From positions 35,030,001 to 35,094,000 of the forward strand of contig CM060732.1 of NCBI GenBank assembly GCA_030704615.1: a DNA stretch of 64,000 nt, read 5' to 3'. A model generated the notes under the pieces. It was not told the DNA's origin and searched no databases. It was given only the letters and a program-made list of their open reading frames with translations. A program made the translations under genes and the position numbers. The first letter of the stretch is position 1; each line of letters begins with the position of its first letter. Positions 2,098 to 48,800 of the stretch are shown here, piece by piece. The DNA is from Takakia lepidozioides (taxonomy: Eukaryota > Plantae > Bryophyta).

Positions 2098-3340
2098 CTA
2101 ATCGTCAGCCGTCTTTTGACAATCCATTGGATTGCGCCGTCGTTCTCGCTCCATCTGATGAGTGTTAGATCGTGATGTACTGTTGTCACAGTCGGTGAAT
2201 TCATCTGGTTCGTTCATATCAGAGTTTAACACGATGAGTGACTCGTTGGCTGCTTCGTATTCGTTCATGGTGTTGTAGGGCATGTGTGATGGCCACGGCT
2301 CTCCATACGGTATACGTGGTGGTAGTGCCGACATCCAAATTAGTGGTGGTCTAAATGTAGCGGTGCCCTGAACTCGTACTGCCACCTGTCGTAGTACATG
2401 CTGATTCACCGTGTCGTGATGAATGTAGTATGCACTAGCGATTTCACGTTCTTCATCTGCGGTTTGGTCTTCCTCGTTGGCGTATAAGTCATGTATGAGG
2501 GCTCTGTCATGTATCCCTTTGTAGCCCTTTAACTTGTTGATATTCATTCGTCCCACGAACTCTTGTTCCAAAGTCTGCAAATCAACAGTTCCGTTGTTAT
2601 GTACCTTTTTTATTTGAAACGGTCCCATCCATGGCATTTTCAATTTGCCTCCCAGTTTGATCTTTTTGATCTTTGGTAGCCATAAGACAATTTCTCCATC
2701 TTGGAAAGATTTTACTTTCCCTTCTGATACTCTTTTTTTCCACTGCTCTTGAATTTGTGCCATATTATCTGCAACGTCTGCTCGAACTTCTTCCAAGTGG
2801 AACAATTCATGTTCCCTGACTCGTAGTGATTCCTCTAAACCCCATCGTTCATGAGTCAGGTTCTTAATGTGGGTACCATACACTCAATTGGTAGTAGTGC
2901 TTCTGCTCCATACACCAGTTGAAATGGTGTATGTTTCGTGGTCACCTTGTATGATGTCCTAAATGCCCATAGTGTCGTGTTCATCTTGGTATCCCAATCT
3001 GTGCGATTGGCATTTATTGTCTTTGTCAAGATAATGCATAATATTTTGTTTGTAGATTCTGCTTGGCCATTACCCTGAGGGTAATAAGCGGTACTCTTGT
3101 GGTGCACAATCATGAATTCTTCCGTCAGACATTTTATGGTATCATTCATAAAATGTGAACCTTGATCACTGACAAACGTCTCCAGTGGGCAACCGAATCG
3201 TGTGATTATGTTCTCATATAAGAACTTGGCTGTTGACTTGGCAGTGTTGTCTCTTAATGCCTTGGCCTCTACCCAATTGGTAGTGTAATCAGTGGTTGTG
3301 AGAATGTATTGGTTATGTGTATATCTTGCTGGAGGTTTCA
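2098..3340 (-). mobile_element. Ty3/Gypsy integrase core and C-terminus, frameshifted and 5'-truncated
   Basis: YILTTTDYTTNWVEAKAL, FVSDQGSHF, AYYPQGNGQAESTNK (D,E of DDE), TPFQLVYG, then WMGPFQI (GPY/F motif). Frameshift near 2870. Confidence 0.9.
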
Positions 3341-3351
3341 TGGTAGGGGTG

Positions 3352-4072
3352 TGTCGCGACCCTTTGCCAAGTGAGGGCGAGGGGTTGGGACACGAGAGGG
3401 GCTGCCCCTGTGGTGGGGGCAGTAGCAGCAATAGGAAAGGGGGCTGAAGCACCCTTGAGGGCCAAAGGCGCTCAAGGGAGCAGAGGCACTCACTAGGGGA
3501 GCCCCGCAAGCCGAGTTGCGGTGGGGGCTCCATGTGGGGGTGGGGGTAGCTTAGGGAGTCGTAGTGGGGGTGGCATAGGACTCGCCATGGGGCTGAGGCC
3601 TTGTGGTGGGAATCGTGGGGAGTCTTGGGGCTCACCATGGTTCATTGGGGCCGTGGTGGGTGGGCCAAGACTCACCGCAACTCATCACAGGGAATCGAGG
3701 GTTGTGGTGGTGGTTCACCATAAAAGGACTTGGTTGTTTGTGAGACCTCTACTGACACCTATGTACAGAAGTATATATATGGAGTAGTAACCCCGAGAAC
3801 GGTGCAAGCCCGTTATGTGACAAAATGCTAGTGGGTAAGCAAGCGAAAAGCAACCAAGGTGTGGGGAGCTATTCCGGACTGCCAACAACCAAAGGGAATT
3901 TCCACCCGATCTGTCGAGGGCCTGGTGGGGGAAGCGAGGGGGACCGTTATGCCCCGGTGAGCGGCTAAAGCTCTGAGTTGGCCCGGCGGTCAGTTTGGGA
4001 GTTAGGCGCGCGCATCAAAGCTAGTAACTATTACTTAAAGGGTCGGGAGCTACCAAAGTGAGGTGCGCGACA
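3352..4072 (+). repeat. Gypsy LTR (3' LTR with PPT remnant), same family as the element at 26965-33321
   Basis: Starts TGTCGCG and ends CGCGACA (terminal inverted repeat). Preceded by PPT-like GGTAGGGGTG (3342-3351). Aligns along its length with 26965-27644. Confidence 0.9.
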
Positions 4073-7886: not shown

Positions 7887-9999
7887 CTTAGGCCTCAAAT
7901 TGGATTTTGCAATAACAAAGCCCAAATCCAACCACAAAATGAATATGCTACTTGCAAAAGTACTGCAAAAGTACTGTTTAATACCACACATATAACAGCC
8001 CTAAAACAAAATTGATTTGTCCAACCCGGAAATGTAACAAATTTATGAAAGAGGTATCAGATCATATCTGTGACACTGAATACCAATGCTCAGATGTTTT
8101 GTGTGGACACTTATCAACTCTCTCATAAACCTCTATCTTGATATATAAGAGATTCAAGGTGTGATAATTAGTCAAGCACACTTTAGAGGATAAAATGATA
8201 GTGACGATTATAGCTTCTAAAAGGTAAAATATGTATTATCTGGTCAATAATCACCATTGTTTGATATCTGTTAAACTGCAGCCTTGACTTCTGGCTACCA
8301 TTCAGAGCAACTGTGGGATCAGAGAGAGGGGTCTATGAAGGCCTATGAGGAGGGAATGAAACCTCCCTTCCGTTCTTCTTACTTTCCTCCCATGCGTTCC
8401 GTCTTTTCCTGCCCCTCTTGATTCCCACCATGACCCTGGAAACCAGTTTCCCTTCACTTCCCATCTTCATTTTCCCTCTACGGTTCATACATTTTCCTAA
8501 AAGATGCATTACTTCATGGGAATGAGGAAGTTCCCTTCGACACCGGGGTCCAGAAAGGGGATAACCTCATATTTCCCCTTTTTGCTAAAGAGGGAAAAAG
8601 TTAAAAGCTCCTTGTGTTATAAGTCACATCCATTGAGATCAAATCCGATCTGTTAAACCACCAAAGCTAAATTTGCCAGTAGATTTATAAAAGTGTTGCT
8701 CACTAGGTTTGAAAAATCTCAGCTGTTCATTACAACTAGTGTATATTCTGTTGGATTTTTATCTATGAAAGATGGGTTTGTCAGATATTGCATGCCCATT
8801 TCAATTTTGTGCTGATCGGATACTAGCTCCAAGCTTGCTAGCAACTTCATTAATCATCTTTTCCATGCCAGTCTTAATCATACAAAACAGATTCTTCAAG
8901 TCTTTTACATGTGATGTAGGTCAGTTATTAGCCCGGATTCCATTAGTCATCAGTGGGATTTTCATCCGTACTAGAAGTCCAATGAAGGCGGAGTTTTTTT
9001 TTTTCCAATCTGTCTGACAAAGTTGCCCGGACACATGAAAAAACCTTATCAAAGGATTTTGATCGGAAATATAAAAAGAACTCCAATTGAATTTCATCTT
9101 TAGCTACCGAAGATGCCAACAGTCTATTTTTCAAATGATTTGAAGAACTCCATTAATGCAATAATATTCATAACCACAACTTAACAGGCAACCGCTAATT
9201 GAACGGGGTATCTTCGGCAACCAAAGATGCACCAAAATATTGATGTGCCATACACAATTCAGCCACCATTAGGCTATTTTAGGTTCCATAAATATCCAAT
9301 GAATATCCTATACCAATTAACCTTGGCTCCTTCATCCTTCTTAGTTTTGCAAGAAAAGGGTGCAAAGAATGGAACCTTGATATGCGGTTCGGCTCACAAC
9401 CCCTTGGGCCTTGCCCCAAGTTACGTATCTTGAAATTATGCTTTTATTTTGGTTCACCCTTCTATGTCTATTGTTCTTTTCTATACCTCTTTATTTTATC
9501 AATGTTTGAAATTATTAATTTTCTTATCTATTTCAACCTCTCCCAATCTGCCAAATATGTCACAACTTTCAGATTTGTAGATTCATACGTTGTATTTTTT
9601 CCCCTTCCGTTTTTTTCTATTGTGTAGCCCACCTCTTTCTATCTCTTCTAAGACTCTCTCTATCCCTTGACACATTAAATGTCTCTAACAATCTCTTCTG
9701 ACCTCTCTTCTCTAGTATCACGTGCCTTGTATCTTTTCACTCTTTCAGCTCTTTCTCTATTCTTTAGCCTCTACTCTTTGGCACACTCTAAGAAGATCAT
9801 AATTTGTCTCTCCTCGTTAGCATAGTGAACATTAGGAGTTGTCAAATAAGGTCTGTTTTATTTGTATTTTGGAGGATTTTTTTTGGTTTAATTGTTGTAG
9901 ATTGAAATACAAGTTCATTGCTTTTGTTAACATTTGCAAAGGAGATATATTCTAGATATTGTAGTTGTCCATACATTTGTGATAGTAAAGTTAGTGACA

Positions 10000-11277
10000 A
10001 TTGCGAGACCACGAGCAAAACCTACAAGCCGGCGACGAGGACCTTCAAAGGCCTCGTCGTCTAGGTCAAGATCAAAAGCTAAGAAAACAAAAAAAATAAT
10101 GAAGAAACGAAAAGATGAAAGACGTCCTAAACGGGCGTTGGCACCCTACATGTACTTCTGCAAAGAACAACGTGAGAACATCACCGGAGATAACCCAAAC
10201 ATCACTTTTGGTGATGTTGGTCGTGTTCTTGGTTCCCAATGGACTAGTATGTCTGAAAAAGACAAAAAGGTGAGTCTAATATTGTGCACATTAATTTATG
10301 TTGAAGGTCCCCAACACATTGATTCAACATCTATTTTCCTTCATGAAACTTTCTCTTAGCTTATAAAATCTGGATTGATCAACCAAATATTATGCCTACG
10401 AATTTAAGCCAAAATTCTCTTTATGGTAACTCTAACAATCATTCAAAGATTGAGATTTAAGCTTTATCATGTATAGTATTATTCATATATATAAAATATA
10501 CTGTGAAATCTCAGTAAATCACAATGGCATCAAAGAGTTAGTTGCATCTCGGTGTCACCAATGACTTTTATTATTATTTGTTTTCAATGTCTTTCCTATT
10601 TTGACTATTTATGTATCACATGTTGAGATGCTCTTAGTCACTAGAATATAAATGTTAATTTTACAAATAATATATATAACTATTGAGATTGTTGGGTTAG
10701 TCAAGAAAACCGGCCTATGGAAAATTGTATAAGATAGCCAAGTCTATAATAATGAAATCATGTTACAACAAAGTATTAGTTTACAAGTTGGAACTGACCC
10801 GAAATTTATAAGGTGGTAAACAATGTCTAATAACTTCAACAAACCTATTGTTCAATGTGTAATAGAAGGTAGTAGAAGTCCCATACATACTCTAGCATCC
10901 TTGGACTACAACAATAATAAATGCACATGGTTAGAAATATACACATTATGATCCATCCACACATCTTGCAAAACACTTGTAAATTAGACTATCATACTGG
11001 ACTAGGCTAGTTTAGCACTCCATAGTGGATAGTTTTATGAAACATCAATGTTAGATCGGTTATTGTGGGTATAGTGTTTGCACACTGAAAAGGTTCTTGC
11101 ATCAAGTTCTATAGAGGAATATATCCATGGCCCATTTATATCATTTTGAAATTCATCTCTAACCAAGTTGCTTTAGTTTGATCTTGGTTGGTGGGCATAT
11201 TGTAGCCATATATCAGGAAAGCAGAAGCTGACAAGAAACGGTACGCTAGGGAAATGAAGCGGTACAAGAATAACTAG
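10000..11277 (+). CDS. Small basic single HMG-box protein (NHP6/HMGB-like, Arg/Lys/Ser-rich N-tail, no acidic tail); exons 10000(or 10099)-10269 and 11206-11277
   Basis: PKRALAPYMYFCKEQRENITGDNPNITFGDVGRVLGSQWTSMSEKDKK, donor GTGAGT at 10270, acceptor TTGTAG ending 11205, then PYIRKAEADKKRYAREMKRYKNN* completes the HMG box in phase 0. Start uncertain (ATT at 10000 or ATG at 10099). Confidence 0.9.
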
Positions 11278-11475: not shown

Positions 11476-12946
11476 CTGTTTCTGAATCCGTGATCTTCAA
11501 TGTCATAACAAAATGATGCAATATTATTTATACCACAAATTTTCAGTAAGATGATTAGCTTTCAGCATGTACATGTAAAATGCTATTATTTGTATACTGT
11601 CTATAAGTTTTAATGGTATTTTAACATCTATATATTCATGATAGTATTCCATTTTAGCGCCTATTATTTTATTGTTGTTTGGTAGCTATTTTGTGATCAT
11701 CTATCTTTTGATACATATGTATGCATAGATATGTCTAATTGCGTAGTTCAAAAGTGATGAACAGTCCTCATCTCTTTCAAAAAGTGACTTGGAGAATCAA
11801 TCGAGTCACTCCCTGAAGTACAATTTACATTATACGAAGGTGTAACCTCAAATCAAACTCAACAATCTAGAAAAACAAAAATTTAAACATTGTTACTGCA
11901 ATGAAAATTATTATTGGGATTAATGGATACGTTAATCATCAAGACAATAAATGCTTCAAATAATTTAATAATTAAATATAATTCGATATTTTTAGTTTAT
12001 CAGTATTGTGACTGATACTGTAAAATCGTGCAAGCGGTTAATATTACTTAAATAACTAGATATGCTACCTATATTCTTTTTATAATGATTACTGAAATAT
12101 TATTCGATTTTAGTAAAGTCAGGCTATGTAAAGTCAGGCTATGTTAAATACATAGTTCATTTTAAATTCTATACTAAGAAGATGTTAATGGTACTTCATA
12201 ACATATGCGACTAATAACCAATCCGTGGCCAAACTTTAGTCTAAATCACGTTGAATTTATATACATATTTATAAAATAAAAATCTTATTGTAGATTTCTA
12301 ATTGGCATATCCAAAGGCTGGTTTATAAGGTGCTTATTTTGAGCACCTTTTGACTTGGTTAATCTGAAGAATATGTTCATGAATTATGATTAGTTATTTC
12401 TAAAAATTGAACTTGGCTTCTATGACAAATTTGTAATATGATCTACAGGCCGGTCTCCATCCCCTTTCTTTACTTAACTAATAAGAAAAAGGAAAAGATT
12501 GATAACTATGTGAATAAAACGTGGACTCTTGTAAATTAATTTTAACTACAGTTGGAGGATGCACACCTTAGAAAACTAATATCAATATCTGACTCCAGTT
12601 CAAGTGTGCTTATTTCAAGTCTTCAGAATCACCTCATTGACATGACAAAGCAAAGCTGAAAAATGTAATATTAAGCATACTATGGAAAACAAACACAGTG
12701 TACAAAATGACATATGTACCATTGGATGCAAATATACAATTCTATTAAAGTTTAGAAAGTTATAAAATTGTCCATATTCTCAATTAAACATATAAAGAGT
12801 AATTATATAAAATTAATTATTGTGTACGAGTAGAATATTACACAATGTAGTTACCAAAATAATTCCATGGTCCTTGTGAATTAATTCCATCACACATAAG
12901 TTAGTAAGAGACTTTTTAATGAAAATTGATAAATTGAGCATATATG

Positions 12947-12964
12947 TGGTGTCAAAAGACACCA
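12947..12964 (-). promoter_or_regulatory. 3'UTR stem-loop of protamine-like gene 1 (mRNA UGGUGUC-UUUU-GACACCA)
   Basis: Perfect 7-bp stem with 4-nt loop, 53 nt after the stop codon. Identical copy in the paralogue at 34747-34764. Confidence 0.65.
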
Positions 12965-13017
12965 GAGATGAAGCCTTATGTCATGCTCATTATTTAAGCA
13001 CTGACATTTCCTGGCCT

Positions 13018-13710
13018 TTATTTTGAAGTGGTGAGTGCAGGCGAATGACGAAGGGGGGTGTCAATGCCTGCATGCCCAGGATGGATTTGGTTGATATTCC
13101 GGCTGTGAGATTGAGATCTTGAGCGGCACCGATGTCGAAGTCCATGACTCTTACATACCTTATGCCTTCTGTGATGTGTGTGACAATATTCGTTCCGCTT
13201 ATGTCTTCTATGGTGTGTTTTACACCAAGTTGCTTTGCGAGAACGACGGCGGCGACGACGAGGAGTCCGTCTTCTCCTCCTCCTCCTTTTACGATGTTTA
13301 CGAGCTGGACGTCGTCTACGATGTGAACGACGGCGACGGCGACGACGTCGATGCTTCCGATGACTTCTACGACGGCGTCTGCGCCGACGTCTTGAATGTG
13401 AACGCCTCGGTCTTCTTCTGTGGTGACGTGAAAGAGAAGTCCCAAAATCATCGTCATTTGGGTCAGCTACTTTGCTCTTGTAGACACTCCCCGATTTTTT
13501 TATTCTGCCCGTTTTTGACAAATGTTTTAGGGCAGAAGCAAGAAGCTTTTTGTTCGTCCCATCAAGTTTTTCTCCATAGTTTTGCTCAAGGTCCTTCCGT
13601 ATTTGGGTCAAGCTAGCACCCCTACGTTGCTTAAGATGAACCATTGCTTGTTGGAGTATATTAAAATATGTGGGACGTATAGGCTTTTTTGAACTTGAAG
13701 TCTTCGTCAT
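13018..13710 (-). CDS. Protamine-like sperm nuclear basic protein 1 (histone H1 winged-helix plus Arg/His/Cys-rich tail), 230 aa, intronless
   Basis: H1 globular domain (PTYFNILQQAMVHLKQRRGASLTQIRKDLEQNY...LASALKHLSKTGRIKKSGSVYK) followed by poly-Arg runs. This is the architecture of the Marchantia PRM-type protamine precursor. Confidence 0.9.
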   Translation of the reverse strand: MTKTSSSKKPIRPTYFNILQQAMVHLKQRRGASLTQIRKDLEQNYGEKLDGTNKKLLASALKHLSKTGRIKKSGSVYKSKVADPNDDDFGTSLSRHHRRRPRRSHSRRRRRRRRRSHRKHRRRRRRRRSHRRRRPARKHRKRRRRRRRTPRRRRRRSRKATWCKTHHRRHKRNEYCHTHHRRHKVCKSHGLRHRCRSRSQSHSRNINQIHPGHAGIDTPLRHSPALTTSK

Positions 13711-13940
13711 TATTGCTAAACTTGGTGTTCAAAAGAAGTCTAAATGAAGATACAAATCCAACAAAAACGGTTCTTCCGGCACCAAAAGGGAAAAAAAGGT
13801 ACAAACTAGCAATGAACACGAGAGCGACACATTGAAGAAGTCCAAGAGTTATAATACAGAAAGATATGAGATCACGAGGGAAGGCTTCCCAAAAGGAAGA
13901 GTGAGAGAATATTGTGAGAAAAACTGGAGAGAAACGGCGG

Positions 13941-29700: not shown

Positions 29701-32700
29701 ACTATAGGGCTCTGAATAAGGTGACTATCAAGAACCGGTACCCTTTGCCAAGAATCGACGACCTCTTCGATCGGTTGGCAGGAGCGAAGTATTTCAGCCG
29801 GATCGATTTGCGCTCCGGCTACCATCAAATCCGAGTGGCGGAAGGAGATGAGGAGAAAACTGCATGTAGGACAAGATATGGTTCGTATGAGTTCTTGGTG
29901 ATGCCTTTTGGACTCACCAACGCACCCGTGACCTTTAGCACGCTGATAAACAGCCTTTTCTAGGAGTGGCTAGATGACTTTGTGATCGTGTACGTCGACG
30001 ACAACTTATCGTAGATTTGTATTGTGACACCACGAAGACCCTCGATTCTCGGTGATGAGTCGCGATGAGTCTTGACCCACCCACCACGGCCCCATTGGAC
30101 CGTAGTGAGTCCCAAGATTCCCCACGACTCCCACCACAAGGTCTCCGCCCCATGGTGAGTCCTATGTCACCCCCACTAAATCCCACTAAGCTACCACCAC
30201 CCCTTGTGGAGCCACCCCACCGCAACCGGTGTGCGGGGCTCCACCTAGTGAGTGCCTCCGCCTCCTTGAGTGCCTTGGGCACTCAAGGGTGCTTCAGCCC
30301 CCCGTACCTATTGCTACCACCGCCCCCCACCACAAGGGCAACCCCTCTGCGTCCCGACCCCCTGTCCTCAAGGCAAAGGGCCGCGACACACACCCCTACC
30401 AACAGGGAGTCGATGTCCTCATCGACTTGTCCATTTTGTAGAAACGAACATCCAAGTTGTGGCGTCCCACATCAAGGAGTTTGTTTCCGCACCATGGCGT
30501 CCCATGGCAAAGAACCAAACCCCACACTTGACTCTACTCTCCACTAGCTAGTTCGGCCGACTTCCTCCAAGTCTCGGCCAAGGGTGGAGCCTCTCAAGCT
30601 CCTCCCAGTGCACTCTTCTTGGCCCACTTCACGGCCAAGGAATGATCCTCCCCGATGATCGAATCGCCTTACTGCAACAACATTGCTTGCAACCGCTCAT
30701 GATGTCGCTTTTGACATCACCTTGAGCAAAGGTTCACCTTGAACCCTTTTTTGACTAGGAAAACCTTGAACCAACCGTGCGCCCCAATCACTACGATTGG
30801 GTCCGCCTTGGAATGCTGGCCTGAGGTACGGCAACACGCCGAAGCCGCACTACGACTTCGTCCCGAGGCTACACGATTATAGTACGTGAACGGAAGCACG
30901 TAGCTTCCGCGTTAGCCCGCACTACAAGGCAACCCCCTCGGTAGCGCAGTTATAGTACGCGCACGCGCCAGGTGCGCACTAGCACGTGAACTCCCAAAGA
31001 AGGCGCAAGTTTCCTTGCCCCTTGGATGGGAGTCACCCGATTTTGGCGCTGCGCAAACACACGATTAATCCAATTTACCTCTCCCACTTTTGTAAGCTAG
31101 CATTTTACACACTAGCCAACCATACCATGCATCACCATTCCAAATAAATAAGAGGCGCAACATTTGGAAACCATTTCATTTATAACAAAATTTGTACAAC
31201 ACAAGTTTTTGCAATCGGATTCATGAGCTAGCTAAGCCGGGCTAAGCATGCATTTCCTCCCCCACGATCCAAGGTTGATGTCCCCATCAACGCTTCTTCC
31301 GCTTTTGAGGTCGCCCTTCGAAAGCTGCAACCGCCTCGGATGCGTTTCCCATTTATGAGGCACTGTGCCTGCCTCAAACTTGACTTCCCTCCGCTTCCGA
31401 TTTGCCTGCCGTTCATACCGTTTCCCAGCTTTGGCGATGTTGTACTTTGCGAGCTTCAACAAGCGCTCGCGTTCCTCCAACACCGCTGCTGCTGCCGGTT
31501 CCTCAACGTCTTGGGCAGCCCAACTTGTCGGCACTAGAGGTGCTTTTCCATAGACCAATACGAAAGGGGAAACACCCGTTGCAGAGTGTTTTGTGTTATT
31601 ATAACAGAACTTTGCCGCGTCCAAGTGCTCCACCCAGTCCGATTGGTCCGCCGACACGTAATTCCGCAAGATCTGCTTCACCACGGAATTCACCCTTTTC
31701 GTTTGGCCGTCCATCGTAGGTCGGAAGGCAGTGCTCATCTTGAGCCTCGTCCCCATCTTCCTTCAAAGTGCCCTCCAAAATTTACTCGTAAACTTTGGAT
31801 CGCGGTCCGAGACAATATCCTTCGAGAGTCCATGATGCTTGAAGACGTGGGCGAAGTAAAGTCGCCCCGTCTCCTGTGCCGTTGCCGTCTCCTTGGTGGG
31901 GATGAAATGGCCCATTTACTGAACCTATCCACCACCACCACCATGATTGCATCGAATCCTTTTGATAGCGGCATAGCAGTCATGAAATCCATCGAGACAC
32001 TTTCCCAAGACCCCTCTGGAATCGGCAAGGGTTGTAACAGCCCCGCTTGCTTTTTGTACTCGCTCCGGTTTTGTTGGCATGTGGTGCATGTCTGACATAC
32101 TCCTCGGCCTCCTCCCTCAGTTTGGGCCAGAAATACTCTTTCTTCAAGAGTGTCGCGGTGCGCTTGGCTCCGCCGTGGCCCGCAAGCGGGCCATCATGAC
32201 ATTCTCTCAAGAGACTATCTCTGATCCCTTCCTTCGGCACGTAGAGACGTTTTTGCTTATACCGGAGCAGTCCATTTTGCAAATGGAACTGCGATTTAAT
32301 CCCCATCCTCAAGTCCCGCATCACGGACTTCGCCATCTCATCCTTCCGGTAAGCCTTCCGGATCTTCATTTGGGAGTGCCGTCTCGCCCCTGTACACCAA
32401 CATAAGCTGCTGCTTTCTACTTAAAGCATCGGCCACCACATTGTCTCGTCCCGGTTTGTACTGGATATCCACGTCGAAGACCACCAAAGTATCTTGTCAC
32501 CTAAGTTGTTTTGGGGATAATTTAGGCTGCGTGGCAAAATACTTCACCGTGATATTGTCCGTGAACACCTTCACCGGGTTGGAACCAACATAGTGGCGCC
32601 AAAGCTCAAGGCAATGCACCACCGCCTTCATTTCCTTCTCATGCGTAGGCCACCGTCGCTCTACTTCATTCAGTTTCTTACTTTCATAAGCCACTGGACG

Positions 32701-33755
32701 TCCATCCTTCATGAGTACACCCCTATGGCGAAGTCCGACGCATCCGTATGAATCTCAAATGGATGGTCGAACTCCGGGATTTTGAGGACTGGAGCTTCCG
32801 CCATCCGCTGCTTCAACTCGACAAAAGCTTGGCCACAAAAGGTGTTCCATACCCAAACTTTGGATTTACACAGAAGGTCTGACAGCGGCCCCGCGATCTT
32901 GGCGAAATTTCTCACATACTTCCGGTAATAGGAGGCGAGTCCTAGGAAGGATCGCACTCCCGGGATCGAAGTCAGAGGCTTCCAGTCCAAGATCGCTCTC
33001 ACCTTTCTGTCATCCATTTTGATCACATCCTGTGTAATCACATGCCCCAGGAACTCCACTTTTGTGACCCCGAATTCGCACTTTGAAGCTTTGGCATACA
33101 GTTTCCCTTCCCGCAATTTCCGGAACACCCTTTTGAGGTGCTCCAGGTGCTCCTCCTTTATTTTCGAGTATACCAAGATGGGGAAGAAAGGGGGACCGTT
33201 ATGTCCCGGTGAACAGCCGAAGCTCCGAGTTGGCCCGGCGTCCAGGTTGGGAGTTAGGCGCGCGCATCAAAGCGAGTAATTATGACTTGAAGGGGAGCTT
33301 ACCAAAGTGAGGTGCGCAACAGAAGGAGCCCAGACAGTACATGCACTGGGACTAGTTGATAGAAGCACAAGTTTGGCATATTATCCCTGAAGTCAGAGAC
33401 AAGAAATTTCTACAGAATTATAGAATGACCTATGAGGCTTTCAACAATTTGGTTGATGAGCTTATGCCACTTGTTAAGTCCACTACATTAAATTTTGTAA
33501 GACCACACTAGAGATCCGAAAGATTGTAGCAGTTGTTTCTTATCGATTCGCACATGGCATTTTCCCACCTATAATGGCAGATCGATTCAATGTTGGTCAA
33601 CCATACGCAAATATATTGACATTGTTTGTGTTGCTTTTACGACACCCGAATGTCTATTTAGCAAGTACATTGACACACCGACATGAGAAAGATTAACAAA
33701 ATAAAACATGTTTCAAGCAGATTACGGGGCTGCCTAACATCGTTGGTGCCATATA
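26800..33755 (+). mobile_element. PIF/Harbinger transposase relic split by the Gypsy insertion (parts about 26800-26964 and 33327-33755)
   Basis: RIWWK before the insertion. After it: NYRMTYEAFNNLVDELMPL, RKIVAVVSYRFAHG, ADRFNVG, ITGLPNIVGAI (HARBI1/ALP1-like N-terminal half). Confidence 0.75.
26965..33321 (+). mobile_element. Ty3/Gypsy (chromovirus-like) LTR retrotransposon, full length, with internal inversion
   Basis: 5' LTR 26965-27644 (TG...CA); Met-tRNA-type PBS TGGTATCGGAGC at 27647; gag from ATG 27700 with CFNCGEPGHMAKKC; protease LVDTGAS; [13 protein letters not shown]...YVDD; TSD GAAGG at 26960-26964 and 33322-33326. RH, INT, degraded chromodomain-like remnant and PPT lie on the minus strand in about 30027-33180. 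Confidence 0.93.
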
Positions 33756-33985: not shown

Positions 33986-34130
33986 AGTTGTGTGTGGTAT
34001 TTAATTTATTATTATCTTCTCCCCCTCCCTTGGAGGTGTCCATGAGCTGTGTGCTTGGAGCCTCATGGCAAGGTTACTTAACAAGGCGTGAGATACACGG
34101 AGGCCCTGCCATTGTTTTATTGATATGAAT

Positions 34131-34457
34131 TGTAACATGTGCCCAACTAGGAACTAAAAACTTTCATGTTCCCATTAAGTATCATAGGAACAACCCATGA
34201 TATAAGGTTAAGGTCACTTTGACCAACTTGATGCGTAGTCCCTACCCTATGTGGCAGCATGAAGCGTAACATGTGCCCAATTGGGAACTAAAAAACTTTC
34301 ATGTTCCCATTAAGTCTCATGGGAACAACCCATGATATAAGGTTAAGGTCACTTTGGCCAACTTGATGCGTAGTCCCTACCCTATGTGGCAGCATGAAGT
34401 GTAACATGTGCCCAACTGGGAACTAAAACCTTTCATGTTCCCATTAAGTCTCATGGG
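34131..34457. repeat. ~135-bp tandem repeat, about 2.4 copies
   Basis: GTAACATGTGCCCAA...GGAACTAAAA recurs at about 34132, 34266 and 34401. Confidence 0.9.
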
Positions 34458-34746
34458 CTTGATATTATTATGATTAGCATAATAAAACCTGATGATGTCG
34501 AATCACCGCACCGCAACTCCTATTCTATTCTACTTAGCAGATACTATGTATTTTCAATTGTGTTTTCATGGACAACCCAAATGATGATATACAACATCCA
34601 ATATAAATACATAGATCATGTAAACTACATATTTATGCGACTTTCGAAGTCAATGCAATCGCTTACTTATGAAAATGGCTATTTTATATACGAAATAAAA
34701 TTTAAGTATAAAGAAGAGCGATAAATTGTAGATATATATATATATA

Positions 34747-34764
34747 TGGTGTCAAAAGACACCA
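34747..34764 (-). promoter_or_regulatory. 3'UTR stem-loop of protamine-like gene 2
   Basis: Identical to 12947-12964; 48 nt after the stop codon. Confidence 0.65.
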
Positions 34765-34812
34765 GGTTGTGTGATGTTGTGCTCAATGTTTAGCACCGGA
34801 CCGTCTTGGCCT

Positions 34813-35466
34813 TCATTTGGAGGTTGTAAGTGCAGGGGATGAACGGATGGGAGTGTCAAGACCCGCGCCGGTATGAAGTTGGTTGTTGTTCCGGCTATGG
34901 GATGCCGACCGCAACCGGCAGCACGTCTTATGCCTTTTGTGATGCGTGCGACAATATTTGTTGCGCCGATGTCGTCTATGATGGGTCTTACAATACGATG
35001 ATTTACGCTCGCGTGTTTTTTTAGTGCGACGACGACTCCTCCGTCTTCTTCTTCTCCTCTTTCGTTGTTGTCGACGATGACGTCGCTTGCGGTGGGACCG
35101 ACGACGACGTCGTCGACGTCGGTGGCTCCGACGACGACGGCGACGACGTCTTGAATGTGAGCGGCGGCGCCGGTGTCGTCTGTGGTGACGAGAAAGTGAA
35201 GATCCAAAATCGTCGGGGTCCTTTACGGAGGTCTTGTACATGTTTCCCGTCTTCTTAATTCTTCCCGTCTTCGAGAGATGCTTGAGAGCGGATGCAAGAA
35301 GCTTTTTGTTGGTGACGTCGAGCTTTTCTCCGTAGTTCTGTTCGAGGTCCTTGCGGATTTGGGTCAAGCTCGCTCCTTTACGCTGCTTAAGATGCACCAT
35401 GGCTTGCTGCAGCATGCTGAAATATGTGGGGTGCAATGGTTTCTTTGAGCTTGTAGTTTTCGTCAT
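34813..35466 (-). CDS. Protamine-like sperm nuclear basic protein 2, 217 aa, intronless paralogue
   Basis: H1 winged-helix nearly identical in protein to 13018-13710 despite many synonymous changes. Poly-Arg tail and the same C-terminus SPALTTSK. Confidence 0.9.
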   Translation of the reverse strand: MTKTTSSKKPLHPTYFSMLQQAMVHLKQRKGASLTQIRKDLEQNYGEKLDVTNKKLLASALKHLSKTGRIKKTGNMYKTSVKDPDDFGSSLSRHHRRHRRRRSHSRRRRRRRRSHRRRRRRRRSHRKRRHRRQQRKRRRRRRRSRRRTKKTRERKSSYCKTHHRRHRRNKYCRTHHKRHKTCCRLRSASHSRNNNQLHTGAGLDTPIRSSPALTTSK

Positions 35467-35627
35467 GGTTGTGCAATGTTCCTACCCGAAAACACAATCG
35501 GTTTAGAGAATAATGGAAGGAATAGAGGCCGCCAGTTTCTAAAAGAGAGAAAAAATGGGACCAAGAGAAGTTGCCTAAGGGAAGAGGGTGAGAGGGAGTG
35601 TGAGAAAGAGGAGAGGTAAATCGAAGG

Positions 35628-45800: not shown

Positions 45801-48800
45801 TCTGGCTGAGAACCGATGCACCTCCATGAATACTTAAACGTACTTCCCAACCTGATGTCATTCACTTTCTGGCTTGGAAAGCAACCCCAGGAATGATGAA
45901 CTTCCCAATCTTCTCCATCCTCTGATCACGCAAGTGTCATGGATAGGCGCAGGCCTCTTACTTTCCCACCACAGCCATCCACCCCTGACAGACAAAGAAA
46001 GAAATATCAGTGAGCACTGTTACATATCATTTATCTCTGTGGCACGAACTGACAGCTGAACTTGGGCCTGCAACTAGACATGGATGTCAACCCACGTTTA
46101 CTGCAAACTCCCACATGCGGACAGACCCCCTTCCCCTTCTTTTCACTACCCACACAACTCATTCACTGCAGTGCAGCATGCTTCCTGTAGTGTGCGTTTT
46201 TTTCCTCTGTGCTGTCAGTGTGGATTGGCAGGTGCGCTCTGTCAGAGCCCTTGAGCCTAAATTCAGAGAAATGCAAATGATGGAACACAGGTAATGGCAG
46301 ACTGTGGGGACTTCGGCTCTTTAATTACTTATCATGATAAGTATCCCAGTTTCTTAATCTCGCCCTGGGTCACATAAAAGCACCAGAAATGAGAATAATG
46401 ATACCACCCACCAAATTTACAACCCTTCTTACTAAATCTTCTAAAAAAATTAAAAAAAGGTAAAACAAAGCTGTGGGGGCAAAAACTTGGCCACTAAATA
46501 GCCCTAGAAGAATCTTTATTGCTGTATTTATAGCCAATACGTTAACCCACTTTACAATACTTACAGTTTATTAAATGTTTCCAAGGGGACAAAAGCTGAT
46601 TGTGAATGATTACAAGGGGGGCAAGATAACTTATCATAATCAGTTTCTACTGTTTGATGCTAATTCAGAACTAAACTAAATTTGGGGGCAACTGAGTCTG
46701 GATCCAATGAAACCATAATAAGAAAAAACAAAAACAAAAAAGACAATACCTATTAGCCTTGTGGTTTGATGAATGAAAGATTCTCAACTATGAGGCTGAT
46801 GGATGAAAGATGGGGGTTAGCAGGCTAAATTTTGCATCAACCAGAGTTGAAAGGGTCCCATTTCCCCTGGCCAAGGAAATTGTTTGTGACGGTAACTATT
46901 TTTGGCCTCACCCAATATAGGGCCTTTGGATTCCCGGTCATGACTCATGTATAGATAACTTGAAGTTTATTCAGTTTCAGCAGCAGAACTTAGACTTGGA
47001 GTCAGTTTGCAGAAATGCCAGACCCAGCTTGATTTCTGTGTGAGGGAGACCAAATCCAGGTCATTACATGCTCCAAGGGGACCAGAGCTTCAGAAAGCTC
47101 TTACAAACCCCATATTATACATGTCCAGAGGCAATGATAGCCTTTGCAAAGCAATAAAAACAGAACTTCTTCAGGGCAAGTTCCTGGCAACAATGTTCCA
47201 TACAAGTAACCGTTGCCAGACCCAACAAGTTGATTATGAGAGCCCTGAGAGAGTTACCTGGATTTTGTCTCCCTGCAGAGGCAGAAATCCCGTGAAAAGC
47301 ATTCAATCGCAGACCCAGCAACACAAACAAAGATGTATGATTCAAAACGCTGAGGCAGGCTTGGTCTCATGGGAAACTTATGGCAGTCTATAATTAGCCT
47401 GAAAAGGATCATAGACTATGAGGAACCTGTTGGATGCAATTTGCAGTGCTCAAATATTTTACTCTAGGTGGTTTGGGTTGAACACAGCAGAGCCCAACTC
47501 ACATGGAGGAAAATAAACTATTAGGGTTCAGATCACCGAATAAACAGGTTTCTAGCAAAGAGGTAAAGCTTTGTGCAGTGGGTGGAAGAATGGGTGCTAT
47601 AGGTTGTTCCTGTGGCACATGACCTTCCCATGTTGCCTGCTCACCTACCCTCAGGGAAGCTTCACAGAACCAACGCGTCTTGCAAGTTGCTCTGCAATCT
47701 GCAGTCTTACAAAACTCCAATGAAAACTTAATCAGGCACTGGAATCTCAGCCCAATTAGTCCTCATATGTATTTTGTTGGCCAATTCGAAATAGTTGAAA
47801 CAGGTGGCCTAAGTGTTATCATGGTGTTATATGGTATTGATATCGCTGCTTATGCCAAGCAGCATAGTACAGGTGGAAATAGGTAGCCTAAGTTTTCTAC
47901 ATTAAAGGACACCTTCATATTAGTACTTACCTCGATGGTGATGGGTGGCCAGATAGGTGGCCAGATTCATCTCTTCTGCGTGCAAGTCATTTGCAACAAC
48001 TTAGTTTGTGTTGTTTTTTTTTAAGAGGGACGGAGGCTGTGTTGTTCAGATTGCACTGAGAACACTGCTCAATACAACACAGCCTCCGTCCCTCTTCAAA
48101 AAAAAAGAAAAAAAGAATACTGATCAGTGTTCCCACTGTTGCAAATGGTGTTTGAAATATATACCTATTGTCTGAAATGGATAGCCTGACCTCTCTCCTC
48201 GAAACTGAGGACAGGGGAGTGTGGCAACTTGCCAACAACACTTAACCCCTGAAGGACGAAATTTTGAATGGATGAAAAAACTGCAGATGAAGTAGGATGA
48301 AATCAAGCTCTGAATGAAAACTGTAGCTTATTAGATTCTGTGTGACACCCTAAAAAACCTAAAGGATTGCCTTCAGGAATTTTTGGAGTGCCAAGGGGTA
48401 CCCACAATCCGATGGTTTGAGGCCCTCCAGCAAGGTTGATTCACCATGTGGCAGGGCAGATGGGGGTGTGTGTGGGCATTTCTCCACGACGTGTGCCTGC
48501 ATGTCCGCCCGTGCGGACAACAGCAGCCCCCGGGCACGCACAAACGGTGACGGAAGATGATGGGGCAGGGCGCTCCTGTTTCTGCATCTCCTGTCCTCGC
48601 AACTACGATCAGCAGATGGTGAATCGTGATTTTAGTGTAGGGTGGGGGGGGGGGGAAGTGACTGAGCAGCAGCAAGCCTGAGGAGGGGGGGCTTCCTGGA
48701 ATGAGGGGCCCGGCACGAGGCGGTAGCCAGGTGCGTAGCCCCGAGTTTCAGGAAGGCCCCCCTCCCAGGGCCTCACCTTGCATAAAGAAACAGCCAGGAT

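What the first reader, a model, noticed from the sequence alone, without database searches (positions are those of the whole stretch)
12947..12964. Histone-mRNA-like 3' stem-loop perfectly conserved in both protamine-like genes
Seen: mRNA-sense U-GGUGUC-UUUU-GACACC-A lies 53 and 48 nt after the two stop codons and is 18/18 identical (second copy 34747-34764), while flanking UTR and synonymous sites have diverged. Known: the replication-dependent histone stem-loop bound by SLBP has a 6-bp stem beginning GG and ending CC, a 4-nt U-rich loop, and lies shortly after the stop. It occurs in animals and some green algae, whereas land-plant histone mRNAs are polyadenylated. Differences here: G at stem position 4 and a C-G closing pair instead of U-A. 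Inference: a retained or convergent 3'-end or translational-delay element for spermiogenesis on H1-derived genes.
Basis: partly seen in the sequence, partly recalled or inferred. Interest (0 to 1): 0.82.

Follow-up and report, generated by a model that had tools for sequence, protein, structure and literature searches.

The report
Conserved hairpin behind moss protamine-like genes
Two old duplicate genes for sperm-type (histone H1 plus arginine-rich tail) proteins in this moss-like genome carry an identical small RNA hairpin about 50 bases after the stop codon; the same hairpin follows related genes in other mosses, so it is a real, selected control element that looks like a diverged histone-mRNA stem-loop, though that identity is not shown.

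Summary
U-GGUGUC-UUUU-GACACC-A lies 53 and 48 nt after the stops of two minus-strand genes that encode an H1 globular domain plus an Arg-rich tail.

It is not chance and not recent copying. Synonymous sites between the copies are saturated (pS 0.81), yet the 19-nt hairpin block is the longest identical run in the whole alignment.

New here: the same core (GGUGUY-UNNY-RACACC) lies 67-82 nt after the stop of protamine-like H1 genes in Ceratodon purpureus, Physcomitrium patens and one unnamed sample. It has one compensatory pair change (C-G to U-A) and a second conserved block, UUAUCAAYUU, 13-16 nt downstream. Sphagnum-like and liverwort relatives, and other paralogues, lack it.

Rfam Histone3 scores only the window copies, below threshold (24.7 and 23.6 bits; cut-off 34), and does not score the other mosses. 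In P. patens, contigs that look like transcripts run about 450 nt past the hairpin.

Verdict: a conserved 3'UTR hairpin, probably a diverged histone-type stem-loop. SLBP binding and a role in 3'-end formation are unproven.

Unchecked scan notes report SLBP genes and H4 stem-loops elsewhere in this genome; none reports this hairpin.

The parts
12947..12964 (-). Hairpin copy A: U-GGUGUC-UUUU-GACACC-A, 53 nt after the stop (7 bp if the outer U-A pair is counted)
   Evidence: RF00032 24.7 bits over 12923-12968; model R1 66.3 bits
34747..34764 (-). Hairpin copy B: identical 18 nt, 48 nt after the stop
   Evidence: RF00032 23.6 bits over 34723-34768; model R1 62.6 bits
13018..13710 (-). Protamine-like gene A: uninterrupted ORF of 230 aa, with an H1/H5 globular domain (residues 13-72) and an Arg-rich tail ending ...DTPLRHSPALTTSK
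34813..35466 (-). Protamine-like gene B: uninterrupted ORF of 217 aa with the same architecture; dN 0.097 and saturated dS against copy A
12922..12933 (-). Downstream block UUUAUCAAUUUU, 13 nt 3' of hairpin A. It matches UUAUCAACUU, which lies 14-15 nt after the hairpin in Ceratodon and Physcomitrium
   Evidence: alignment A4; L037 keeps UUGUCAACUU
34718..34728 (-). Weaker version of the downstream block (CAAUUUAUCGC), 21 nt 3' of hairpin B after a (UA)n run
12983..13001 (-). Proximal 3'UTR helix GUGCUUAAAUAAUGAGCAU between stop and hairpin. Its counterpart in copy B is at 34779-34796. It lies in the stretch that is 60% identical

Best explanation
The hairpin is a cis-acting RNA element in the 3'UTR of moss sperm-type (protamine-like, H1-derived) mRNAs. 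Most likely it descends from the histone mRNA 3' stem-loop that H1 genes carried in the green lineage, and it is still read by a stem-loop-binding protein of the SLBP type. Mosses are reported to keep SLBP, and scan notes report two SLBP-like genes in this genome.

Inferred mechanism: the invariant GGUGU/ACACC stem and the loop that always begins with U form a sequence-specific protein-binding site. Binding sets the fate of the mRNA in spermatids. It could give a poly(A)-less end just after the stem, with the conserved UUAUCAAYUU block 13-16 nt downstream playing the part of a downstream element. Alternatively it could store and time the translation of a polyadenylated message while chromatin condenses and transcription stops.

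Shown: the element exists, it is under purifying selection, and it is shared by several mosses at the same place in homologous genes.

Inferred: descent from the histone stem-loop, the binding protein, and the effect on the mRNA.
For: Selection:
- The paralogues are saturated at synonymous sites, yet the 19-nt block is the longest identical run of the alignment.

Conservation across species:
- GGTGTN6ACACC was found at five loci: the two window copies and one locus each in three other mosses. P. patens has two tandem copies, so there are six sites in all.
- Every site lies 48-82 nt after the stop of an H1-GH1 plus Arg-rich gene: Ceratodon L022 4569-4586, P. patens L027 3470-3487 with the extra copy at 3454-3469, and Logan sample L026 936-953.
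- A decayed copy sits in L037.
- All 35 pair cells are standard pairs. There is one compensatory change (C-G to U-A) and one U-A to U-G change.
- A second conserved block lies at a fixed distance downstream.

Likeness to the histone stem-loop:
- RF00032 hits at 24.7 and 23.6 bits, E 0.014 and 0.038 for the whole window against all 4227 families. These are the only two RF00032 hits in the window, and both lie just after H1-type genes.
- G at stem position 2, the only base-specific SLBP contact, and the 3' flanking A are present (PMC10388802).
- The host genes are histone H1 derivatives.

Lineage context:
- P. patens has SLBP and poly(A)-less core histone mRNAs with RF00032 stem-loops (PMC13130582).
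- Mosses keep SLBP (bioRxiv 10.64898/2026.10.14.759114).
- Unchecked scan notes report SLBP genes and H4 stem-loops in this same genome.

Precedent:
- Sperm-specific histone variants of animals keep the 3' stem-loop (PMC5011920).
Against: - Both RF00032 scores are below the gathering cut-off of 34. The Ceratodon, Physcomitrium and L026 hairpins get no RF00032 hit at E up to 10.
- Loop position 3 is A in those three species.
- Stem position 4 is a purine.
- The two 5' flanking A's needed for full SLBP affinity are replaced by C/A-U.
- No purine-rich downstream element is present.
- P. patens Logan contigs with transcript-like, gene-centred ends run from -108/-249 to +524/+553, past the hairpin to an AAUAAA-rich site. 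At least one mRNA form therefore keeps the hairpin internally.
- The element is absent from the Sphagnum-like relatives that share the window proteins' C-terminal motif, from other Ceratodon paralogues and from the liverwort Calypogeia.
- I could not obtain a moss core-histone or canonical H1 stem-loop for comparison, nor any RNA data for this organism.
Confidence: 0.45

Rival explanations
1. A conserved 3'UTR regulatory hairpin with no relation to the histone stem-loop. It would be the binding site of some other RNA-binding protein inside an ordinary polyadenylated mRNA. It would control storage, localisation or timing of translation, as the 3'UTR elements of mammalian protamine mRNAs do. The resemblance to the histone stem-loop would be coincidental.
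For: - P. patens contigs read through the hairpin to about +550, next to AAUAAA motifs.
- RF00032 does not score three of the five hairpins.
- The invariant core GGUGU/ACACC differs from GGYYYU. The loop varies at positions 2-4. The 5' A's are lacking.
- The U/G-rich spacer and the UUAUCAAC block could be ordinary plant far-upstream poly(A) elements.
Against: - It would be a coincidence that a 6+4+6 hairpin beginning GG, ending CC-A and with a U-first loop sits 48-82 nt after the stop of histone-family genes, in a lineage that still uses the SLBP pathway.
- The two window copies are the only RF00032 hits in 64 kb.
Confidence: 0.35
2. A DNA-level palindrome rather than an RNA structure: a binding site for a dimeric transcription factor, or another DNA signal placed just downstream of these genes (GGTGTY N4 RACACC inverted repeat).
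For: - The half-sites are invariant while the central 4 nt vary. This is typical of dimeric factor sites.
- The sequence is palindromic, so the strand cannot be told from the stem.
- Only one compensatory event supports pairing.
Against: - The Ceratodon U-A to U-G change keeps RNA pairing but breaks DNA symmetry.
- The loop is U-rich on the sense strand in all species.
- The position is fixed relative to the stop codon (48-82 nt), inside what are transcribed 3'UTRs in P. patens-type contigs.
- A one-sided conserved block follows it on the sense strand.
Confidence: 0.1
3. Chance or neutral leftover: a short palindrome kept by recent gene conversion, or hitch-hiking with the duplication, without function.
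For: The element is short, and only two copies lie in the window.
Against: - Synonymous sites are saturated, and the flanks drop to 36-45% identity on the far side.
- The same core recurs after homologous genes in three other mosses, whose proteins are only about 40-55% identical in the globular domain.
- Dinucleotide shuffles give 0.08 expected matches of the core in the window.
Confidence: 0.03

Closest known systems
Replication-dependent histone mRNA 3' stem-loop (Rfam RF00032) bound by SLBP
   Same: - 6-bp stem beginning GG and ending CC, with a 4-nt loop beginning with U.
- An A after the stem.
- Lies a few tens of nucleotides after the stop of a histone-family gene.
- G at stem position 2, the base SLBP reads (PMC10388802).
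- Sub-threshold but window-unique RF00032 hits.
   Different: - Purine at stem position 4.
- An extra U-A pair in place of the unpaired A/A flank, and no 5' AA.
- Loop position 3 is not U in three of four species.
- No purine-rich downstream element.
- Scores are below the Rfam cut-off, and the other mosses get no score.
- No evidence that the mRNA ends at the stem.
Poly(A)-less, stem-loop-ended core histone mRNAs with SLBP in Physcomitrium patens (PMC13130582) and moss SLBP/stem-loop surveys (bioRxiv 10.64898/2026.10.14.759114)
   Same: Same plant lineage. These papers show that the pathway the hairpin would need is present and active in mosses. [quoted passage not shown]
   Different: - Those studies covered core histones only. 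The first used PF00125 genes in vegetative tissue; the second excluded linker histones.
- Neither describes a GGUGUY hairpin or protamine-like genes.
Sperm-specific histone variants of animals that keep the 3' stem-loop (for example Hydractinia H2B.3/5/6, PMC5011920)
   Same: Male-germline chromatin-compaction genes of histone descent that keep a stem-loop in the 3'UTR.
   Different: - Those stem-loops are canonical, and the genes are replication-dependent.
- Here the host is an H1-derived protamine-like gene of a plant, and the hairpin has its own conserved sequence.
Germline SLBP paralogues that store silent histone mRNA (Xenopus/zebrafish SLBP2; PMC6239174), and 3'UTR translational control of mammalian protamine mRNAs (the latter from my own knowledge, not checked here)
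   Same: They offer a working model: a 3'UTR element bound in germ cells delays translation until chromatin remodelling.
   Different: No binding protein, storage or delay has been shown for the moss element.

Membership tests
[quoted passage not shown] | 6-bp stem with a 4-nt loop, shortly after the stop codon of a histone-family gene | tested here: met
   Lies 53 and 48 nt after the stops of two PF00538 genes and is the minimum-free-energy fold. In other mosses the distance is 67-82 nt.
[quoted passage not shown] | G-C, G-C at the base of the stem; G at position 2 is the base-specific SLBP contact (PMC10388802) | tested here: met
   GG...CC is invariant in all five intact hairpins.
[quoted passage not shown] | Pyrimidines at 5'-arm positions 3-6 and a U-A closing pair (GGYYYU/ARRRCC) | tested here: not met
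   Position 4 is G in all species. The closing pair is C-G in the window and U-A in Ceratodon, Physcomitrium and L026.
[quoted passage not shown] | U at loop positions 1 and 3 | tested here: inconclusive
   The window loop UUUU meets it. UUAU, UUAC and UAAU in the other mosses keep only U1.
[quoted passage not shown] | Two A's 5' of the stem and one A 3' of it (the minimal high-affinity SLBP ligand, PMC10388802) | tested here: not met
   The 5' neighbours are CU or AU, and the U pairs with the 3' A. A 3' A is present in 4 of 5 hairpins; Ceratodon has G.
[quoted passage not shown] | Covariance-model score at or above Rfam's gathering score (34 bits) | tested here: not met
   24.7 and 23.6 bits in the window. 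No hit at E up to 10 for Ceratodon, Physcomitrium or L026. Positive control: the non-plant H1 locus L019 scored 32.6 bits in the same kind of search.
[quoted passage not shown] | mRNA ends 4-5 nt after the stem without poly(A); a purine-rich downstream element pairs with U7 | tested here: inconclusive
   No RNA run exists for this organism. P. patens contigs read through to about +195 or about +550, but whether they are RNA is unverified, and poly(A) selection would hide stem-loop ends. The downstream block is conserved but not purine-rich.
[quoted passage not shown] | SLBP (PF15247) encoded in the same genome | not tested
   Known only from unchecked scan notes s1-461015 and s1-454897 and from literature on mosses (PMC13130582). 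The rest of the genome was not readable here.
H1-derived protamine-like sperm nuclear basic protein | Linker-histone globular domain followed by an arginine-rich tail | tested here: met
   PF00538 at E 2e-8 and 2e-11, with long Arg runs. Relatives occur in P. patens, Ceratodon, Sphagnum-like contigs and Calypogeia.
H1-derived protamine-like sperm nuclear basic protein | Expression in spermatids and presence in sperm chromatin | not testable with these tools
   No RNA data for this organism. By analogy only: MpPRM is DUO1-dependent in Marchantia (PMC6290024).

The most novel reading that the evidence does not exclude
Mosses run a second, germline branch of the histone stem-loop pathway. Protamine-like H1 mRNAs would carry a variant stem-loop (U-GGUGUY-UNNY-RACACC-A) plus its own downstream element (UUAUCAAYUU). 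These would be read by one of the SLBP paralogues, and perhaps by a U7-like RNA. The result would be poly(A)-less or stored messages whose translation is timed to sperm chromatin condensation. On a weak GH1 tree the window genes branch outside Sphagnum-like and Bryopsida proteins, so the element may date to the base of mosses.
Probability: 0.15. Interest if true: 0.8.

Novelty: new variant of a known kind. Interest (0 to 1): 0.6.

Why it matters
How plants with swimming sperm time the production of protamine-like proteins is unknown. In animals this depends on 3'UTR control of stored mRNAs. A short, strongly conserved hairpin behind these genes in several mosses, including the gene-targeting model Physcomitrium patens, gives a concrete handle. 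It can be mutated, used as bait for its binding protein, and mapped by 3'-end sequencing in antheridia.

If the binding protein is SLBP, the histone stem-loop pathway, only recently shown to be active in mosses for core histones, would extend to linker-histone derivatives and to male germline chromatin remodelling. It would also show how a stem-loop can drift in sequence while its gene changes function.

If the binding protein is something else, the hairpin is a new plant 3'UTR element.

Tried and rejected
- Exact look-up of both window proteins in public assemblies: not on record.
- RNA evidence for this organism: no run holds the stretch. The two small runs with the same species label gave zero depth.
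- Word-based homologue search with the globular domain alone: blank.
- Sphagnum-like metagenome loci L001 and L003-L018 (three or four protamine-like families), Calypogeia L002, Ceratodon P0015 and P0025, and the P0007 family: no RF00032 hit, no GGUGU hairpin and no R1 hit. The element is therefore not universal.
- Canonical moss H1 gene for comparison: the ten Lys-rich representatives I looked up were gymnosperm, angiosperm, algal or unnamed Logan proteins, none identifiable as moss. No core histone gene lies in the window or in any plant locus I fetched. The direct comparison with moss core-histone or H1 stem-loops was therefore not made.
- The scan's findings searched by sequence: blank.
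- Lopez and Samuelsson 2008, Tan et al. 2013 and the supplements of PMC13130582 are not held.
- A careful IQ-TREE run did not return. Only a FastTree of 70 columns was obtained, and I give it little weight.
- Rejected: that the hairpin belongs to the convergent HMG-box gene or to a mobile element. The only context shared by the two copies is the protamine-like gene.

Full report
**Observation**

The 18-mer TGGTGTCTTTTGACACCA, read on the minus strand, occurs exactly twice in the 64-kb window, at 12947-12964 and 34747-34764. No further match appears even with three mismatches. Each copy lies downstream of an uninterrupted minus-strand ORF: 13018-13710 (230 aa) and 34813-35466 (217 aa).

Both proteins match Pfam PF00538 (linker histone H1/H5) in their first 70-odd residues, and an arginine-rich tail follows. 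The hairpin is the predicted minimum-free-energy fold in both contexts. It has 7 pairs if the flanking U-A is counted, at -11 kcal/mol with z about -4 against shuffles.

**Is it more than chance?**

The two genes are old duplicates. Over 84 ungapped codons of the globular domain, pS is 0.81, which is saturated, and dN is 0.097. Only 13 of 31 fourfold-degenerate sites agree.

In the 1087-column alignment of the two loci, the longest identical run is the 19-nt block C-TGGTGTCTTTTGACACCA. It is longer than any run in the coding sequence. Identity is 60% between stop and hairpin, 100% in the hairpin, 36% in the next 50 nt and 45% beyond. Recent gene conversion and neutral survival are therefore excluded, and the hairpin is under purifying selection.

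**Related sequences**

The window proteins are not on record in public assemblies, and no RNA run holds this DNA. Homologue searches and a metagenome scan recovered a large set of moss proteins with the same build, a GH1 domain plus an Arg/His-rich tail. They come from Physcomitrium patens, Ceratodon purpureus, Sphagnum-like contigs from moss-associated metagenomes and unnamed Logan assemblies. Similar proteins also turned up in the liverwort Calypogeia.

I scanned the 3' flanks of these genes for hairpins. The second H1-type gene of Ceratodon locus L022 (4073-4501, 142 aa, protein P0156) carries A-UGGUGUU-UUAU-AACACCG-U, 67 nt after its stop. Two relatives of that protein have the same element:
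- P. patens (P0023, named 'histone H1-I' by NCBI; L027): U-GGUGUU-UUAC-AACACC-A at 3470-3487, 82 nt after the stop. An imperfect tandem copy lies just upstream at 3454-3469.
- A Logan sample (P0020; L026): U-GGUGUU-UAAU-AACACC-A at 936-953, 77 nt after the stop.

A fourth relative (P0136; L037) has a decayed copy, GGUGAU-UUAU-AACACU, which overlaps the stop.

Across the window and the distinct loci fetched, the core GGTGTN6ACACC occurs only at these places.

In an alignment of the five intact hairpins:
- all 35 pair cells are standard pairs;
- five pairs never vary;
- the closing pair changes on both sides (C-G in the window, U-A in the others);
- the outer U-A becomes U-G in Ceratodon.

This is one compensatory event, so covariation support is thin. 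The stronger signal is sequence invariance, which points to sequence-specific recognition.

A second block is conserved 13-16 nt after the stem: UUAUCAACUU in Ceratodon and Physcomitrium, UUUAUCAAUUUU in window copy A and UUGUCAACUU in L037. It is weaker in copy B and L026.

A covariance model built from these five (R1) finds no other copy in the window or in the other loci. The element is absent from:
- the Sphagnum-like families, including the one that shares the window proteins' C-terminal motif DTP.R.SPA.T.SK;
- the other Ceratodon paralogues (P0015, P0025);
- the P0007 family;
- Calypogeia.

A FastTree of the globular domain (70 columns, little weight) puts the two window proteins outside all Sphagnum-like and Bryopsida proteins. 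If that placement is right, the element predates the split of these lineages and was lost repeatedly.

**Is it a histone stem-loop?**

At Rfam's gathering thresholds the window has no hit. With E-value reporting, RF00032 (Histone3) matches 12923-12968 at 24.7 bits and 34723-34768 at 23.6 bits. E is 0.014 and 0.038 for both strands of 64 kb against all 4227 families. These are the only RF00032 matches in the window.

A non-plant H1 locus picked up by chance (L019) scored 32.6 bits in the same kind of search, so the method does see H1 stem-loops. But the Ceratodon, Physcomitrium and L026 hairpins give no RF00032 hit at E up to 10, even in very short searches.

Feature by feature:
- Present: the GG...CC base of the stem, with G at position 2. 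This is the only base that human SLBP reads specifically, through Arg181 (PMC10388802). A 3' flanking A is present in 4 of 5 hairpins.
- Absent or different: the two 5' flanking A's, which are also part of the minimal high-affinity ligand (PMC10388802). Stem position 4 is a purine. Loop position 3 is U only in the window. No purine-rich downstream element follows.

The element therefore has the outline of a histone stem-loop but its own conserved sequence. Membership in RF00032 is not met.

**Context from the literature**

- A 2026 preprint likewise reports SLBP and stem-loops in mosses (bioRxiv 10.64898/2026.10.14.759114).

Both studies looked at core histones only, and the preprint explicitly excluded linker histones. 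I found no paper that mentions a hairpin behind bryophyte protamine-like genes.

Unchecked first-reader notes of this scan report two SLBP-like genes and canonical stem-loops behind H4 genes elsewhere in this same genome. I could not read those places.

In animals, sperm-specific histone variants can keep the stem-loop (PMC5011920). In Marchantia the protamine-like gene MpPRM is a DUO1-dependent spermatid gene (PMC6290024).

**Where does the transcript end?**

There is nothing for this organism. For the P. patens gene, ten public contigs carry it.
- Four short contigs, from four runs with accession numbers in two separate ranges, begin 108-249 nt before the ATG and end 524-553 nt after the stop, next to AAUAAA motifs.
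- Two others end at +192 and +196.

Their gene-centred, non-repeat boundaries look like transcripts, but I could not verify that the runs are RNA. If they are, the hairpin (+82 to +100) is internal to at least the polyadenylated form. This does not exclude a stem-loop-ended form, which poly(A) selection would miss. It does lower the odds that the hairpin is mainly a 3'-end signal.

**Conclusion**

Shown:
- a short hairpin under strong purifying selection;
- shared by protamine-like H1 genes of at least four moss lineages;
- at a constant place in the 3'UTR, with a companion downstream block.

Most likely (0.45): it is a diverged descendant of the histone 3' stem-loop, still used as a protein-binding site of the SLBP kind for post-transcriptional control in spermatids.

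Rivals:
- An unrelated regulatory 3'UTR hairpin in a polyadenylated mRNA (0.35).
- A DNA-level palindrome (0.1).
- Chance (0.03).

The conserved variant on sperm chromatin genes appears undescribed in the papers I could search, and it is directly testable in P. patens.

**Limits**

- No moss core-histone or canonical H1 stem-loop could be fetched for comparison.
- The organism of the window is not identified beyond 'moss-like, and not Physcomitrium, Ceratodon or the Sphagnum-like source of the metagenome contigs'.

Noticed in passing
window 12983-13001 (-) and 34779-34796 (-): A second, proximal 3'UTR helix (GUGCUUAAAUAAUGAGCAU / GUGCUAAACAUUGAGCAC) lies between the stop and the hairpin. The whole stop-to-hairpin stretch is 60% identical, against 36-45% further out, so more of the proximal 3'UTR may be constrained.
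   Followed up: partly
window 13766-13772 and 35499-35503 (sense = minus strand): A MYB-core AACCG motif (AACCGTT / AAACCGAT) lies 55 and 32 nt upstream of the two start codons. It may fit DUO1-type control, since MpPRM is DUO1-dependent in Marchantia (PMC6290024). A motif this short could be chance.
   Followed up: no
window 13021-13065 (-) and 34816-34860 (-); L008 about 3100-3151: A conserved non-basic C-terminal peptide, (I/L)DTP.R.SPA.T(T/A)SK, ends the window proteins and one Sphagnum-like family. The Bryopsida proteins that share the hairpin lack it. It might be a processing or cleavage signal.
   Followed up: no
L027 3454-3469: Physcomitrium patens has an imperfect second copy of the hairpin (GGUGUA-CCGC-AACACC) directly upstream of the intact one.
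   Followed up: partly
L001 1555-1568; L008 3171-3184; L016: Sphagnum-like relatives that share the window proteins' C-terminal motif lack the GGUGU hairpin. They have another small hairpin, UGAUC-UUCA-GAUCA, 16-34 nt after a stop that runs into a (GAU)n repeat.
   Followed up: partly
L022 4073-4501 and 10001-10522; window 13018-13710 and 34813-35466: Protamine-like H1 genes sit in pairs on the same strand in both Ceratodon (5.5 kb apart, only one with the hairpin) and this window (21.8 kb apart, with Gypsy-type retroelement sequence between them).
   Followed up: no
window 48016-48102 (-): A long, nearly perfect hairpin gives weak hits to animal miRNA families (29.9 and 28 bits, far below their cut-offs). 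It may be an inverted repeat or a small-RNA precursor.
   Followed up: no
window 34100-34460: Three tandem copies of a unit of about 120 bp lie just 3' of copy B. A reverse-transcriptase fragment lies at 32497-33176 (-).
   Followed up: no
window 9934-10359 (+): First exon of a basic HMG-box gene about 2.6 kb from the 3' end of copy A. It has no hairpin of this kind.
   Followed up: no
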